Shown piece by piece: positions 21,243 through 26,715 of a stretch of 52,960 nt of DNA; position 1 is the stretch's first letter; each line of letters opens with the position of its first letter. The stretch is taken from NCBI GenBank assembly GCA_033442325.1, contig JAWQFM010000026.1:740228-793187 (forward strand). Reading direction: 5' to 3'. Below the pieces are notes generated by a model, which made no database searches, was not told the origin of the DNA, and worked only from the letters and a program-made list of their open reading frames with translations. This stretch comes from Salpingoeca rosetta (Eukaryota > Protista > Choanoflagellata). The translations under genes were made by a program, and so were the position numbers.

Positions 21243-24200
21243 TCAGCTTTGAGTACGACTGGCCATTGCACGGGCTCCAAGGAACAAGTCTTCGCGGAGC
21301 AAGCTGTTGAGCTCGTCCATGACGCCCTCCTTCCCACCGCTTCCATCATCACGCGGGGTCATTCGAGATACGCGTATTTGTCCTGCACCAAGGGCGTGCT
21401 CGATTTGCTCCAACGGATAGGCAGCGGGGCTTGGGCGGTACGACGCAAGGTGGGCGTGGCTCAGGACAAGCTGGTCGTACGCAATGCCTTTGGCTTCTTC
21501 TTCGGCTTCAAACAGCACCTGTTGGCACAGGGATAGGGAGGTAAACACGAGGGGAATGGGAGAGTGAATGAAACAGCTGCCAACTGCGCGGGGAGATTGG
21601 AATCGCACAACCTTCGCCAAGGCAAGGCGCAGCATGACACCCAATAACCCCACGTTCACTTACACGTATTCAAGTATGTAACTCACTCACACACACACAC
21701 ACTCACTCACTCACTCACTCACTCACTCACTCACTCACACACTCACTCACTCGCTCACTCACTCACTCACTCACTCACTCACTCACTCACTCACTCACTC
21801 ACTCACTCACTCACTCACACACAAACACACACACTCACTCACTCACTCACTCACTCACTCACTCACTCACTCACACACACACGCACACACACGCACACAC
21901 ACACGCACACGCACACTCGCATGTACACATTGTTTACCATTGAGAGTGCCAGCCAGGCAAGTTCTGCTTCGCCTTGCATGCCACGAACCCAGAGGTCGAT
22001 GCTGCTGTCGCCATCAATGCGACCAAAACACTCGATGGTGTCAAACAGTCGGCCATGGAAGCCTTTCCGCCACAAGCTGGTGCTCCCTGCATCAAACAGC
22101 GCTGCGACCCTTGTCTGCAGGCGAGGAAACAGGCCAGGTGGAAACAGCATCCCGCTCGATTCACGAATGAGGAAGCGGCGGCCACCAAACACGTGCGCCT
22201 GGCCGTCATCTGCCCATTCAACGCCTTCGGTCGCTCCCAGTCGAAATGGCAGCATGTAGCGGGGAGTCGCTGCTTCATCATTCCCAGGTGGTGGAAGCTC
22301 GTAGCAGAGCAGCATGTTGGACAGCACATCCACGACCTGCTCTGCCGGCACAAGATCGCCATACACCGCCCTGATCTCCTGCAGTGTCACTTCCCCATCA
22401 CGCGGTCTCAGCTGTTTGATGTCGTGAAAGTCTTCAGGTGCGAGTGCGGGCCCAAGGATGGTACTGAGCAGCCAGAAGGGCGAGATGAAGACGTGGTCGC
22501 GAAGGGACGGCATTGACTGGAACCACAGCAGGTTGCCGCGCACGTGGAGGTGGCTGACAACAGCACGAGCCACCCCGCAAGAACAGAGCACGCACAACGA
22601 AGTCATGAGTGCACCAGAAAGCGAGGCACTTCGCAAAGCAATACACGCAGTGAAGCAATACACTTCATGCAGCGAGAGACTTGGCAGAGCAATACACACA
22701 GTGAAGCAATCCACACAGTGAATCGATCCACATTGTGAATCAATACACTTGGTGAAGCAAGACGCGTGCCCCCATCCGCTGGACAACCGCACCAGATCAA
22801 AACCCAACCCCCACATGCCAAGCAATTTGTACGGCGAGATACCTGAGCGAGCTTCTGATGATGGTTCTGTCGGCGTCGGGGATGAACTCCAAGTCAGGTG
22901 CGCTTTCAGCCAGATCCTGCATGAGGTTCTGGATAGTCCACAGTCCTTCCTTGGTTTGCTCGCAAGCTTCACCAATGGCACGTGCCACTATGGGAACCTG
23001 ATTCTCGCGTGCTCGCACGTCCTCCCATATGTTGTGAAGTAAGTTTCCCAGCTGCCTCAACTCGTCGCTGCTGGTGTCGTGGCAGTTGAGGGCAACGACG
23101 TGCGGGTGTAGCTCCATGCTGCCGCCAAACCAGCTCGCCACTTCCTCGCTGGCAAGAAGGGCGTCGCCCTGCTCGAAGCGCAGGACATCGGCCGTGACAC
23201 CAATATCAATGGCAAGTCGGTGCCCCGGATGCGGCTGGTCCGCCCTCGTGCCAACCACGATGACCTTGGGCGGCGGTGCATGGGAAGAGTGCGCGGCTGC
23301 TTGGTGCAGGCGAGTCTTGATGAACCTGAGCCAGCGGTAGAGGGACGAGCGGAACGTGTTGAAGTCCGTGCTCAGGGCAACGCACACGACGAAGACGGCG
23401 TTGTGGTCGGACAGCATCAGCTCGTGCGCGACGTGGTACTCCGCTGTTCCGGCAAAGTCGAACACGTGGAGATCGCAGTTGGCGGGGTGGTTGGCGTCTT
23501 CCCCACTGCCAAGCGTAGCGCCAGAGAACAAGGCCGCCGCCCCCCTCTGGCCAAAACCAACTTCGTCAAGCGCAGGTGCGGGCATGTTTGGGGCAGGAAT
23601 GCGGACCCTGCGCAACTCGACGCCAACCGTTCTCTCATCTGGCCGGTCAGCCTCGTCTCGTGACGACTGCTGTGGATCATAGGGTGTTCCAATCACTTGC
23701 AGCGAGCGCACGAGCGTGGACTTGCCGGTCCCCTGATCGCCACACACAAAGACGCTCATTGTGGTGTGCGAGGTGAGTTCATGTTGAAGGAATGAAGGAA
23801 GGGCCTCATGGTGCCTTCTGTTTCGCGCCACAGCAGCGTTGATGCTGGTCAAGATGCTGTCAGAGATGCCCCAAAATCGGTTCAGCCTACACGGACAAAG
23901 GGGAGAACGATATCGCCGTCAAGTGTCATGCAATAAGTAATAAGCTTGTGTACTCAAGTCCGAGTCAAAGTCATGATGTAAAAACTCAGCGTTGCACAGT
24001 AGATAGACCTGTAAACGTTTACATCCAGACATCCGTGAATGAAACAAGTGCGAGGCGCCATATGTGTAATTTGTTCGCTTACTCGAGCGCACGAAGGGTC
24101 TTGTTTTGCTGCAACGACTGAGCAATGGCTGTCCCGGCGGTGTCGCTCAAGAAGTTGCAGTCCAGACTAGTGAAACAAGAACACAAGCAGGGCGCATTTG

Positions 24201-24464
24201 TTATGATGTGCCAGCCTCAAGCGCGAATGCTGGAGTGTCTTACTTGCATCTTCAGTATGCATCAACACACGCACACACGTGTTTGCAGATCATGCTGTCA
24301 TTATTCACCTGAGCACGTCACAAGAACACGCGCAAGAACGGTTTCCTTACTCGAGCGTGTGCAGTGTGCGGTTCTCTTTCAATGCCCCGGCAAGTGCAAG
24401 TGCGCCATTTTCACCCAATAACGTGCTGCACAAGCTGTGTGTGTGTGTGAGTGTACGTGCGTGC

Positions 24465-24528
<64 letters not shown>

Positions 24529-26715
24529 GAGTGCGAGACAGACACACACACACACTTACACACACACACACACACGCACACACACACGCGCGCGCGCGCA
24601 CAGACAGAGGGGGATGGACAGGTGGCGCCATTCGCTCAGGCTGCGTACACTGAACCAGCTTGCATGCAGTTCATTCCAAACCACCTCCCCCAACCCTTGC
24701 CAACCGCATGAGCACATCATTGTTCGTACTTGAGGGTGTGAAGCGTCTGGTTCTGCTTGAGTGCCAGGCAAATTAGATATGCTCCATCCAGTCCAACCCG
24801 CGTTTCACTCAAGCTGGAAAGCCAAGATCAAGCAAGCAAGCCAGTTGCACACAGGCAGGAACACCTAGTGAGCCAGGATCCCAAATGCTCTGGATCCGAG
24901 TCAAATGGCAACACAACGACTTTCGACTGTGTCACCGGTGAAACTCAGGCGACAAGTGCACTTACTTGAGCGTGTGAAGTGCCTGGTTCACCTTCAACAC
25001 TTCGGCAATGTGGTGCCCGCCAGCCTCCCCAAGGTCGGCGCCGCTCAAACTGAATAAAAGCAAGCAGCAAGTGGCAGAGCCATGAGTGCAGGAGTGCCGT
25101 GGCAGATCAGCCAGGCAGAGGCATTTATGCACATGAGCACTTGCGGCACTTTCATCAGAGTAGAAGCCGTCAACGTTTCTTGCAACAGAGACCAATATCC
25201 CACATACACTCAAACATGCATTATTCATACAGACACATGTACGTCTACATAGATGAACATCCACGCACATGTGCATGCACGCTCACTCTCACTCACACAC
25301 TCACACATAGACATGCACATATGCACACATGCACACACATGCACACACATGCACACACACATGCGCATGCACACATGCATGCACACATGCACACACACGT
25401 GCATACACACACGTGCATACTCATGTATGTATGCTCATGCTACTCACTCAAGTGCGTGAAGCGTGTTATTCTCCTGCAGTGCCTCGGCTAGTGCCAGTGC
25501 ACCAGCCTCGCCCAACCGAGCTTTGCTCAGGCTGTAACCATGACAAAAAGGCGAAATCGTGTGTGAGAAAGATGTGCGTAGCGCTGTAGCGTGGCACGGA
25601 CAGGCAGGCCACTGCTCACACACTAAATGGGCAGCGCAAACCAACCTCAGCTCGGGGCCACAGGCGTTGTTCCAGATGCTGAAGATTTTGGTGAACACGT
25701 CCGGTTCCACGTCAACATACTGCAAGCGTCCCAGAATGTAATCTGTACGGTCTGCATCAGGATGTGGAGCATCTGCCTCTTCCTGCATCTGGTTTCCCTG
25801 CTGCCCACTTTCTGCAGCAGCTTCCTCCTCCTCTTCCGCTTCTTCCTCTTGCTGTGCGTCGCTTGTGTCCATCGGGGCTCGTGCACCATTGTCATCCTGA
25901 ACTGCATTCCCGCGCCACGTCTGCAGCTTGCATGCTCTCACAAACCGTGCAATCTGTGCCGGCGCCAGGGGCTCTCCGTTGACCCGTGCCTCCTTCAGCA
26001 TGCTTTCAAGCACCTGGCCAACGTTTTCGCCGGGTTTATATTGATGGAGGGCACTTGGGTTTCTTTGGATCTTTCTGCGCAGCTTCGTGCACCTGAGGGC
26101 CGCCGTCGCCTGCTCCAGCCTGGGGATGCTTGTGATGTCCAGACGCTTGAGCACGTTGCCAATGGCGTCGCTCAGCTGGTGCGCAGCGAGCCACTGTTGC
26201 AGAGGCAGCTGCTCGGTTTCGCTGGGGGATTCTGACTGTCTCTCGGCATCTGCTGGGCAGGGCGAGGGCTCTTTGAGCCTGGCCGCGTGGAAATGTTGCA
26301 GGAGCTCGTCCATCAAGGCTGGCGGGACGCAGCCTACGCTGTCCGCAGGGTTGACAAACCACCAAAACTGCGGCTCCCAGCCCTTCAAGATCTCGCGCGC
26401 GTACTGGTGCCTAAAGTCGCACTGGCGCACGTTGATGAGGAAGAAGGGTTTTCTGTTGTGGACGATGTACTGCAGCTGGTCGTGGGTGTCCCAGGAAAAC
26501 TCGGTGTTCCTGCCGTAGTCCGTTGTGCCCAGAATGATGGCGAGCTGACAGTTCCGCACGGCTTCGTGGGTTGCGGCTTGTTCTTCAGGTGTAGTTTGGC
26601 GCTCCATATCCTCCATGTACACGTGGACGTTGCTTGTCTGCAGCTGCTGGAATAGCACCATCGACTCATGCGCAGCCTCCTGCAGTCGACTCGAAATGAA
26701 GATGAGCCCGCTCAT
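21243..26715 (-). CDS. ROCO-family protein TIR-(SAM-like)-LRRx5-Roc-COR, ~1141 aa, no kinase domain
   Basis: Exons 26715-25646, 25531-25448, 25049-24966, 24813-24730, 24434-24351, 24166-24083, 23886-22843, 22553-21938, 21518-21243, phases consistent. TIR-like N-terminus (IFISSR..VYMED..EAVRNCQLAIILGTTDY..W..QL). RI-class LRRs (LGEAGALALAEALQENNTLHALE). Roc G1 GDQGTGKST, G2 ERTVGV, G3 DFAG, G4 GTRAD. COR motifs VFISPFWL, FPPGLFPRLQ, LWRKG. Confidence 0.9.
21680..21920. repeat. (ACTC)n/(CA)n intronic microsatellite
   Basis: Long ACTC array grading into CA repeats. Confidence 0.92.

What the first reader, a model, noticed from the sequence alone, without database searches (positions are those of the whole stretch)
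21243..26715. TIR-SAM-LRR-Roc-COR protein: NLR-like logic built on a ROCO GTPase switch
Seen: an N-terminal TIR-like domain (~26715-26280), a SAM-like segment (LQQWLAAHQLSDAIGNVLKRLDITSIPRL..PAQIARFVRAC), an acidic linker, five RI-type LRRs and an intact Roc-COR with no kinase. Established: TIR plus SAM is the effector pairing of SARM1, and LRR-ROCO families have been proposed as immune receptors in non-animal eukaryotes. Inference: a cytoplasmic sensor in which LRR sensing and GTP-dependent dimerisation cluster a TIR effector. I do not recognise this domain order from any characterised protein.
Basis: partly seen in the sequence, partly recalled or inferred. Interest (0 to 1): 0.8.

Follow-up and report, generated by a model that had tools for sequence, protein, structure and literature searches.

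The report
Choanoflagellate TIR-SAM-LRR-Roco gene, disabled copy
This is a real, already annotated but unstudied gene of the choanoflagellate Salpingoeca rosetta that joins a TIR domain and a SAM-like module to leucine-rich repeats and a Roc-COR GTPase; it is the odd one out of seven such genes, because it alone has lost the glutamate that TIR enzymes need.

Summary
A nine-exon, all GT-AG gene on the minus strand (26715-21243) encodes 1141 aa. My model is identical to Salpingoeca rosetta PTSG_08667 (F2UKC0), a "hypothetical protein".

- **TIR:** residues 1-150 fold as a TIR domain, shown by AlphaFold2, Foldseek matches to SARM1 and plant TIRs, and a family profile that hits the Roq1 TIR.
- **SAM-like:** residues 170-269 have no SAM sequence signal. 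A moderate-confidence model matches almost only SAM domains.
- **Rest of the protein:** five 84-nt exons encode RI-type LRRs. Roc and COR follow, with no kinase.

The architecture is not unique. The genome holds seven such loci, and the scan has already reported paralogs on other DNA. Roco proteins with TIR domains have been catalogued in molluscs, flatworms and red algae. A 2026 preprint shows that a TIR from another S. rosetta Roco family makes cADPR.

This copy is the most diverged. The glutamate kept by 99 of 101 family members, and by all six paralogs, is glutamine (Q80). The Roc switch II glutamine is threonine. I therefore read it as a GTP-gated scaffold or regulator, not an NAD-cleaving effector. 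An immune role is untested. Splicing could not be checked with reads.

The parts
21243..26715 (-). Whole coding region of PTSG_08667: 9 exons, 1141 aa
   Evidence: Model built from GT-AG sites. Identical to the database protein P0001.
25646..26715 (-). Exon 1 (aa 1-356): TIR, SAM-like module, acidic linker, LRR N-cap
26266..26715 (-). TIR domain, aa 1-150
   Evidence: AF2 pLDDT 85-96 with five beta-alpha units. Foldseek top matches are TIR domains, with SARM1 TM by target 0.69-0.71. Family profile against PDB gives Roq1 4e-6. 77 of 101 family members hit TIR_2.
26476..26478 (-). Codon CAG = Gln80, at the position where 99 of 101 family members and all six paralogs have Glu
   Evidence: It lies in the first turn of predicted helix alphaC (77-86).
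25909..26208 (-). SAM-like helical module, aa 170-269, with a variable loop (about aa 219-230) before the last helices
   Evidence: Conserved in five paralogs. AF2 pLDDT 72.7. VIA-align top rows are SAM domains, Z 7.5-5. The atlas search returns SAM_1/SAM_2 clusters at rmsd 2.6-2.8. No sequence-level SAM hit.
25750..25863 (-). Acidic low-complexity linker, aa 285-322
   Evidence: Read directly from the sequence.
25448..25531 (-). Exon 2: LRR 1 (84 nt, phase 2)
   Evidence: LRR_6.
24966..25049 (-). Exon 3: LRR 2 (84 nt, phase 2)
24730..24813 (-). Exon 4: LRR 3 (84 nt, phase 2)
24351..24434 (-). Exon 5: LRR 4 (84 nt, phase 2)
24083..24166 (-). Exon 6: LRR 5 (84 nt, phase 2)
22843..23886 (-). Exon 7: LRR C-cap, Roc GTPase, start of COR-A
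22977..23765 (-). Roc GTPase domain, aa 538-800. It carries a roughly 45-aa insert between switch I and G3.
   Evidence: Pfam Roc scores 29.4 bits against a cut-off of 27.
23718..23741 (-). P-loop GDQGTGKS (aa 546-553)
23445..23459 (-). G3 / switch II DFAGT (aa 640-644). The five paralogs examined have DFAGQ.
23238..23252 (-). G4 GTRAD (aa 709-713). P0002, P0167, P0168 and P0169 have GTKAD; the C1 paralog reads GTKVD.
21938..22553 (-). Exon 8: COR-A and COR-B
   Evidence: COR-A E 1.1e-4 and COR-B E 1.2e-3, both below Pfam cut-offs. 43-59% identical to the paralogs' COR.
21243..21518 (-). Exon 9: end of COR-B and the conserved C-terminal tail, then the stop codon
   Evidence: The tail is 48-53% identical to three paralogs.

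Best explanation
**Shown.** The stretch is the intact gene PTSG_08667 of Salpingoeca rosetta. It encodes a cytosolic 1141-aa protein: a TIR domain, a SAM-like helical module, an acidic linker, five RI-type LRRs (one per exon), a Roc GTPase and COR. It has no kinase. It belongs to a family of seven loci in this genome with the same layout, and it is the most diverged member.

**Inferred.**
- By analogy with other Roco proteins, COR dimerises the protein. The nucleotide state of Roc sets the conformation. The LRRs bind a ligand or hold the protein in an autoinhibited state. The TIR-SAM head is the part that is presented or clustered.
- In the six paralogs the TIR keeps the glutamate and probably cleaves NAD+.
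- In this copy that residue is Gln80 and several other family-invariant TIR residues are changed. I therefore expect no NADase activity.
- The Roc switch II Gln is Thr and the G4 Lys is Arg. GTP binding is probably kept, while hydrolysis is probably slow.

The most likely role is a GTP-gated scaffold or regulator that works through TIR/SAM protein contacts, possibly with its active paralogs. It probably does not generate a signal itself. A role in defence is plausible but untested.
For: **Gene model and identity**
- The nine-exon GT-AG model is identical to EGD77569.1.

**Domains**
- TIR fold.
- SAM-like fold.
- LRR_6, 39 bits.
- Roc above the Pfam cut-off, plus COR-A and COR-B.
- No membrane helix.

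**Family**
- The six nearest Roc-COR matches each have the same TIR type 3-10 kb upstream on the same strand.
- P0002, P0167, P0168 and P0169 carry TIR, the SAM-like module, LRR and Roc-COR in one annotated protein.
- The C1, C17 and C29 loci were mapped.

**Disabled sites**
- Position 80 is Glu in 99 of 101 family members and Gln here.
- All six paralogs keep Glu.
- DFAGT here against DFAGQ, and GTRAD here against GTK(A/V)D in the paralogs.

**Divergence**
- The TIR is 30-32% identical to the paralogs. Roc is 42-47% and COR 43-51%.

**Background on TIR chemistry**
- Mutating the catalytic Glu abolished cADPR production in every eukaryotic TIR tested in 10.64898/2026.04.20.719644.
- One of those TIRs comes from an S. 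rosetta Roc-COR-TIR gene.
Against:
- A search for spliced protein fragments found none.
- The match between Gln80 and the catalytic Glu rests on three things: the position in predicted helix alphaC, the motif pattern, and near-invariance in the family. It does not rest on a residue-level superposition. The profile-to-PDB alignments stop before it.
- COR-A and COR-B score below Pfam cut-offs.
- The SAM-like model has only moderate confidence, from an alignment of five sequences. Its Z scores (7.5 and lower) lie in the range where helical models can match by chance.
- No binding, GTPase or NADase measurement exists for any member of the family.
Confidence: 0.55

Rival explanations
1. The protein is an active sensor: ligand binding at the LRRs and GTP-dependent dimerisation cluster the TIR, and the TIR then cleaves NAD+ or makes a nucleotide signal, as in SARM1 and plant TNLs.
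For: The TIR fold and SAM-like module are present. The paralogs keep the Glu. A TIR from another S. rosetta Roco family makes cADPR.
Against: This copy has Gln at the Glu position and has lost several other family-invariant residues: FISLRF is now FISSRL, FLC is YME, and KMC is RQC. In the tested eukaryotic TIRs, mutating the Glu abolished activity.
Confidence: 0.12
2. It is a Roco signalling scaffold unrelated to defence, for example in cytoskeletal, developmental or cell-state signalling as in Dictyostelium Roco proteins. The TIR and SAM-like parts would serve only as protein-interaction modules.
For: Most characterised Roco proteins are not immune receptors. The TIR lacks the catalytic residue. 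The LRR exons are old, only 40-67% identical to each other at the DNA level, and show no sign of recent shuffling.
Against: The family is expanded within one lineage (seven loci). The same TIR type has at least 34 copies with many different partners. Such expansion is typical of conflict genes. TIR joined to LRR and an NTPase is the layout of known immune receptors.
Confidence: 0.2
3. It is a paralog drifting towards loss of function. It is still open but under relaxed constraint, with no specific role.
For: It is the most diverged member in every domain. Conserved residues are lost in both enzymatic centres.
Against: The 3426-nt frame is open across nine exons and all splice sites are canonical. 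The P-loop, the G4 Asp, the COR core, the SAM-like invariant positions and the C-terminal tail are all conserved.
Confidence: 0.1
4. The gene model is an artefact. Exon 1 (TIR and SAM-like) would belong to a gene separate from the LRR-Roc-COR exons.
For: No read-level evidence for the exon 1 to exon 2 junction was obtained here.
Against: - The end of exon 1 carries the conserved motif (K/I)I(F/L)SIWNN, which leads directly into the first LRR in all five annotated paralogs.
- The same order and strand recur at seven loci.
- The frame and splice phases fit exactly.
- Several probable RNA data sets hold 0.46-0.65 of the stretch's words. The exonic share is 0.63.
Confidence: 0.03

Closest known systems
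Paralogous S. rosetta TIR-SAM-like-LRR-Roc-COR genes (PTSG_12838, PTSG_12575, PTSG_07288, the PF00814-fused model P0169, and unannotated or unretrieved loci on C1 and C17)
   Same: They share the same domain order and the same TIR subfamily. The SAM-like module is conserved, with 30 invariant positions. Roc-COR is 41-59% identical.
   Different: All six keep the TIR Glu, and the five examined keep the switch II Gln. This copy has Gln80 and Thr644. It is the most diverged member, with its TIR only 30-32% identical to theirs.
SARM1 / TIR-1 (ARM-SAM-SAM-TIR NADase)
   Same: The TIR fold matches (TM by target 0.69-0.71; profile E 1e-3). A SAM-like fold sits next to it, and SARM1 SAM2 matches at Z 6.0.
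   Different: - The order is reversed, with the TIR first.
- There is one SAM-like module, not two.
- There is no ARM domain.
- An LRR-Roc-COR follows.
- The catalytic Glu is absent.
- There is no SAM sequence signal.
Kinase-less LRR-Roc-COR Roco proteins (Chlorobium tepidum Roco, human MFHAS1/MASL1, brown-alga LRR-ROCOs)
   Same: They share the LRR-Roc-COR core without a kinase. As in brown algae, there is one LRR per phase-2 exon (PMC11378527).
   Different: The LRRs here are the 28-residue RI type (LRR_6), each in an 84-nt exon. The brown-alga repeats are 23-24 residues in 72-nt exons. This protein also has an N-terminal TIR-SAM head and a Thr at the switch II Gln position.
Other Roco-TIR fusions: the S. 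rosetta Roc-COR-TIR family (F2UB80, whose TIR makes cADPR), Aplysia TIR/LRR/ROC/COR proteins, Macrostomum LRR-Roc-COR-TIR, Chondrus TPR-ROCO-TIR
   Same: All join a Roc-COR switch with a TIR, and often with LRRs.
   Different: - In F2UB80, Macrostomum and Chondrus the TIR follows COR. Here it is at the N-terminus.
- The TIR subfamily differs. hhalign between the two S. rosetta TIR types gives only a 37-column local match at 2% probability.
- The tested TIR keeps its Glu.
Plant TIR-NB-LRR receptors (Roq1, RPP1, L6)
   Same: They have an N-terminal TIR, a nucleotide switch and LRRs. The best sequence-profile match of the TIR family in the PDB is the Roq1 TIR.
   Different: The switch here is a Roc GTPase, not a STAND ATPase. 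The LRRs lie between the TIR and the switch, not at the C-terminus. No catalytic Glu is present in this copy.

Membership tests
TIR domain superfamily | Flavodoxin-like fold of five parallel strands alternating with five helices, about 140 residues | tested here: met
   The AF2 model has strands at 4-8, 31-34, 58-63, 91-96 and 116-119, alternating with helices, at pLDDT 85-96. Foldseek finds L6, L7, SARM1, TIR-1, RUN1 and BcTIR among the top matches.
TIR domain superfamily | Sequence-profile similarity to known TIR domains | tested here: met
   The test is met at family level. The profile of 101 homologues hits the Roq1 TIR at 4.3e-6, RPV1 and RUN1 at 3-6e-4, and SARM1 at 1e-3. 77 of 101 members hit TIR_2. 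This protein alone gives only TIR_2 at E 0.14 and DUF4062 at 21-24 bits, below the cut-off.
Enzymatic (NAD-cleaving) TIR domains | Catalytic glutamate in helix alphaC | tested here: not met
   The family position is Glu in 99 of 101 sequences. This protein has Gln80. The link to the catalytic Glu of SARM1 or ThsB is inferred from fold position and motif, not from a superposition.
SAM domain | Compact five-helix bundle of about 65 residues | tested here: met
   In VIA-align against 48,161 chains, nearly all top rows are SAM domains. They cover 59-63 residues of 61-69-residue targets, with Z 7.5-5.0 and rmsd 2.1-3.0. The atlas search returns SAM_1/SAM_2 clusters at rmsd 2.6-2.8. The model has pLDDT of only 72.7 from five sequences, and Foldseek gave nothing significant.
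SAM domain | Match to a SAM sequence family (SAM_1, SAM_2 and others) | tested here: not met
   No Pfam family matches at E up to 10. No PDB sequence hit was found with the single sequence or the five-sequence profile. Language-model look-alikes include SAM_TNK, SAM_1 and SAM_NCD1, but only at 0.76-0.79, below the 0.9 level.
SAM domain | Self-association into dimers or polymers | tested here: inconclusive
   Complex prediction on two copies gave 'no answer'. This is not evidence either way.
Roco proteins | Roc GTPase with G1, G3 and G4 motifs | tested here: met
   Pfam Roc scores 29.4 bits against a cut-off of 27. The motifs are GDQGTGKS, DFAG and TRAD. Two deviations exist: Thr replaces the switch II Gln, and Arg replaces the G4 Lys.
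Roco proteins | COR domain directly after Roc | tested here: met
   COR-A matches at E 1.1e-4 (aa 841-939) and COR-B at E 1.2e-3 (aa 981-1100), both below Pfam cut-offs. The region is 43-59% identical to the paralogs' COR. UniProt names the protein a COR domain-containing protein.
LRRK / DAPK-type Roco kinases | Protein kinase domain | tested here: not met
   No kinase family appears in the Pfam scan of the whole protein or of the C-terminal tail.
RI-type leucine-rich repeats (LRR_6) | 28-29-residue repeats matching LRR_6 | tested here: met
   LRR_6 matches at E 5.4e-10 with 39 bits, against a cut-off of 23.4, on aa 340-535. There are five 28-residue repeats, one per 84-nt exon.
NLR / STAND receptors (NACHT, NB-ARC) | STAND ATPase domain | tested here: not met
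   Only short P-loop matches of 20-30 residues to NACHT and AAA models were found, all far below cut-offs.
SARM1 orthologues | ARM-SAM-SAM-TIR order with a catalytic Glu | tested here: not met
   There is no ARM domain, only one SAM-like module, the TIR comes first, and Gln sits at the Glu position.

The most novel reading that the evidence does not exclude
PTSG_08667 may be a catalytically inert partner in a paired system. Through its TIR and SAM-like head it would co-assemble with the six Glu-bearing paralogs. It would then either act as the ligand-sensing member that switches on an active partner, or cap and restrain their assemblies. Plant sensor/helper NLR pairs such as RRS1/RPS4 work in the first way. 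If true, division of labour between sensor and executor receptors would have arisen on a Roco GTPase chassis in the closest relatives of animals.
Probability: 0.15. Interest if true: 0.7.

Novelty: new variant of a known kind. Interest (0 to 1): 0.45.

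Why it matters
Choanoflagellates lack NLRs (Richter et al. 2018, PMC6040629) but hold large families of TIR proteins. Roco GTPases fused to TIR domains are candidates for the missing cytosolic sensors.

The family with a TIR-SAM head in front of LRR-Roc-COR has not, as far as I could find, been described in a paper. It pairs the two modules that SARM1 uses for oligomerisation and NAD+ cleavage with a different switch.

This copy adds a natural control. It has the same architecture, but both enzymatic centres are altered. 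That makes it a direct way to separate scaffold functions from enzymatic functions in the family.

The general idea is already in print or already reported by this scan: Roco plus TIR, and an active TIR in an S. rosetta Roco protein. The added value is therefore moderate.

Tried and rejected
It sat in a local BLAST subject file in two scripts and was never used as a query.
- **Spliced protein fragments.** A word search with aa 250-600 found only generic RI-type LRR proteins.
- **Orthologues elsewhere.**
  - Word searches with the Roc-COR half of P0001 and the TIR-SAM head of P0167 returned only S. rosetta proteins. The second search missed P0001 itself, so its sensitivity is limited.
  - The exhaustive HMMER search found 185 TIR relatives, but only the P0002 cluster shares the SAM-like part.
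- **Residue-level alignment of the Glu position to solved TIRs.**
  - The full profile aligns only up to strand C.
  - A profile of the second half hits no TIR.
  - hhalign against the experimentally active S. rosetta TIR aligns only 37 columns at 2% probability.
- **Foldseek with the SAM-like model** gave nothing significant.
- **Complex prediction** on two copies of the SAM-like module gave no answer. This is not evidence for or against binding.
- **PADLOC** gave no match for the TIR or for Roc-COR.
- **NACHT/AAA hits** in the Roc exon are P-loop-only and were rejected.
- **Literature search for PTSG_08667** found no paper.

Full report
**What is there.** The window is eukaryotic, with about 55% GC and microsatellite-rich introns. 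On the minus strand between 26715 and 21243 I assembled nine exons, all with GT-AG borders. They give an open 3426-nt frame of 1141 aa. The translation is letter-identical to P0001, returned by the exhaustive protein search. P0001 is Salpingoeca rosetta PTSG_08667 (EGD77569.1, XP_004990457.1, UniProt F2UKC0), named only 'hypothetical protein' or 'COR domain-containing protein'. The public record comes from an assembly whose contig lengths differ from those of the window's genome. Two assemblies therefore agree on the protein. No paper in the library mentions the locus tag.

**TIR domain.**
- On its own the protein gives only sub-threshold hits: DUF4062 at 21-24 bits and TIR_2 at E 0.14.
- The exhaustive HMMER search with aa 1-290 found 185 relatives.
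- A profile of 101 of them hits solved TIR domains and little else: Roq1 at 4.3e-6, RPV1 and RUN1 at 3-6e-4, SARM1 at 1e-3.
- 77 of the 101 match Pfam TIR_2 and 19 match TIR.
- AlphaFold2 with this alignment gives five strand-helix units over residues 4-148 at pLDDT 85-96.
- Foldseek against the PDB puts the L6, L7, SARM1 (TM by target 0.69-0.71), TIR-1, RUN1 and Bacillus TIR domains at the top. The structurally related MilB and DNPH1 nucleotide hydrolases appear alongside them.

**The missing glutamate.**
- The family has a strong motif: FISLRF.EA ... FLC ... LGT.TYG..T...FST..EL ... KPFFL.KMCD.
- At the Glu of 'EL', 99 of 101 sequences have Glu. This protein has Gln80, encoded by CAG at 26478-26476.
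- It also departs at other near-invariant positions: FISSRL, YME and RQCD.
- Residue 80 lies in the first turn of predicted helix alphaC, after strand C and a loop. From established knowledge of SARM1 E642, RUN1 E100, Roq1 E86 and ThsB E85, this is where TIR NADases carry their catalytic Glu.
- I could not obtain a residue-level alignment to a solved TIR. The equivalence is therefore inferred, not shown.
- In the Sorek-laboratory preprint (10.64898/2026.04.20.719644), mutating this Glu abolished cADPR production in every eukaryotic TIR tested. Their supplementary table also records a TIR with Gln at this position (an Albugo protein).

**SAM-like module.**
- Residues 170-269 have no Pfam match at E up to 10 and no PDB sequence match, alone or as a five-sequence profile.
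- The segment is conserved in the four annotated paralogs, with 30 invariant positions. These fall in two blocks, L.QWL...G.VL..L.IT...LEQAT.A.R and L.PA.IA.F.RAC...TW, separated by a variable basic loop.
- An AF2 model from these five sequences has pLDDT 72.7.
- Foldseek found nothing significant with it.
- An exhaustive VIA-align search of 48,161 chains returned almost only SAM domains at the top: EphA2 at Z 7.5 (rmsd 2.3, 62 residues), EphA1 at 7.4, CASKIN2, p73, BICC1 and SARM1 SAM2 at Z 6.0. These matches cover whole SAM domains.
- The ESM Atlas search also lists SAM_1/SAM_2 clusters, at rmsd 2.6-2.8.
- Language-model look-alikes include three SAM families, but only at scores of 0.76-0.79.

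I accept a SAM-like fold with an inserted loop, at moderate confidence. Membership of a SAM sequence family is not shown, and self-association is untested (one search gave no answer).

**LRR, Roc and COR.**
- Exons 2-6 are each 84 nt, in phase 2, and each encodes one 28-residue repeat. LRR_6 scores 39 bits.
- The five exons are 40-67% identical to each other at the DNA level, so the duplications are old.
- Roc passes Pfam's cut-off. It has G1 GDQGTGKS, a switch I Thr, G3 DFAG and G4 TRAD, with a roughly 45-residue insert before G3.
- The five paralogs examined have DFAGQ and GTK(A/V)D. This copy has DFAGT and GTRAD. The Gln that corresponds to Ras Q61 is therefore lost. From general GTPase knowledge I infer slower hydrolysis with binding retained.
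- COR-A and COR-B match below Pfam cut-offs. They are 43-59% identical to the paralogs' COR.
- There is no kinase, no other catalytic domain, no signal peptide and no membrane helix.

**The family.**
- The TIR type has at least 34 copies in the 55.4-Mb genome. Relatives are fused to ARM, SH2, PDZ and other domains.
- The six closest Roc-COR matches in the genome each have this TIR 3-10 kb upstream on the same strand. They lie on contigs C1, C2, C17, C19 (twice) and C29.
- Four of them are annotated as single proteins with the same layout: PTSG_12838, PTSG_12575, PTSG_07288 and a model fused to a Kae1-like gene.
- All six keep the Glu.
- This copy is the most diverged in every domain, and most of all in the TIR: 30-32% identity there, against 42-47% in Roc.
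- Neither the exhaustive HMMER search nor two word searches found the TIR-plus-SAM-like head outside S. rosetta. Sensitivity is limited, and transcriptome fragments could have been missed.
- The scan's own notes describe paralogs of this family on other DNA of the same genome: s1-436004, s1-435961, s1-436025 and s1-436109.

**What is already known.**
- Roco proteins with TIR domains have been listed in Aplysia (PMC9334734) and in Macrostomum (preprint supplement).
- They are also noted in Chondrus and in 'different organisms' with N-terminal TIRs (PMC11378527).
- The S. rosetta TIR shown to make cADPR (F2UB80) maps to locus L013, where it directly follows a COR-encoding frame. A Roco-TIR protein of this species therefore already has a demonstrated TIR activity. 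It belongs to a different TIR subfamily, and its TIR comes after COR.
- One LRR per phase-2 exon is known from brown-alga ROCO genes, which have been proposed as immune receptors.
- Richter et al. (PMC6040629) reported no NLRs in choanoflagellates and many cytosolic TIR proteins. They did not mention Roco fusions.

**How it most likely works.**
- *Shown:* the architecture, the family context and the altered residues.
- *Inferred:* COR-mediated dimerisation, a Roc nucleotide switch, LRR-mediated sensing or autoinhibition, and a TIR-SAM head whose contacts form the output.

Because both enzymatic centres are altered only in this copy, I favour a scaffold or regulatory role, possibly together with the active paralogs. 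The rivals are an active NADase sensor, a non-immune signalling scaffold, a drifting paralog and a mis-joined gene model. They are scored in their own sections.

**Limits.**
I worked beside those places afterwards.
- The only hint of expression is indirect. Six data sets from two studies, guessed to be RNA, hold 0.46-0.65 of the stretch's words. The exonic share is 0.63, and DNA-like runs hold 0.93-0.98.

**Verdict.** This is a new variant of a catalogued but uncharacterised kind (Roco-TIR fusion proteins), and it has already been seen by this scan on paralogous DNA. Its own distinguishing feature is a disabled TIR and an altered GTPase.

Noticed in passing
L013 (G000:C13:1704983-1708153), minus strand, ORFs 3136-1457 and 1875-799: The S. 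rosetta TIR that the 2026 preprint showed to make cADPR (F2UB80) maps here. It starts at the end of a COR-encoding frame and continues after a short intron, so it belongs to a Roc-COR-TIR gene. This TIR type has at least 38 copies in the genome.
   Followed up: partly
Own genome, 34 places listed (for example C4:1718159, C30:546075, C22:920964, C10:914037): The N-terminal TIR subfamily (motif FISLRF...LGT.TYG..T...FST.EEL...KPFFL.KMCD) is expanded to at least 34 copies. Relatives carry ARM, SH2, PDZ, DUF5074 or receptor-like ectodomains. Most are annotated without a TIR name.
   Followed up: partly
P0169 (locus G000:C2, about 396000-402300, minus strand): The annotated model of this paralog carries a Kae1/Peptidase_M22 family hit (PF00814) and is named as a threonylcarbamoyladenine synthase. 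The Roc and COR matches sit in one open frame of 3172 aa. This is probably a merged gene model or an unusually long gene.
   Followed up: no
G000:C17:477500-491500 (L015, L018): This paralog has about 7 kb between its first LRR exons and the Roc exon, much more than the others. It may hold extra LRR exons or an insertion.
   Followed up: no
window 21519-21937 (intron 8), 24435-24729 (intron 4), 25050-25447 (intron 2): The introns carry long (GAGT)n, (GT)n and (CA)n microsatellites. The one in intron 2 (25302-25420) tripped the read tool's filter.
   Followed up: no
window 23445-23459 and 23238-23252: Roc switch II reads DFAGT and G4 reads GTRAD. The paralogs have DFAGQ and GTK(A/V)D. This is a second altered active centre in the same copy.
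   Followed up: yes
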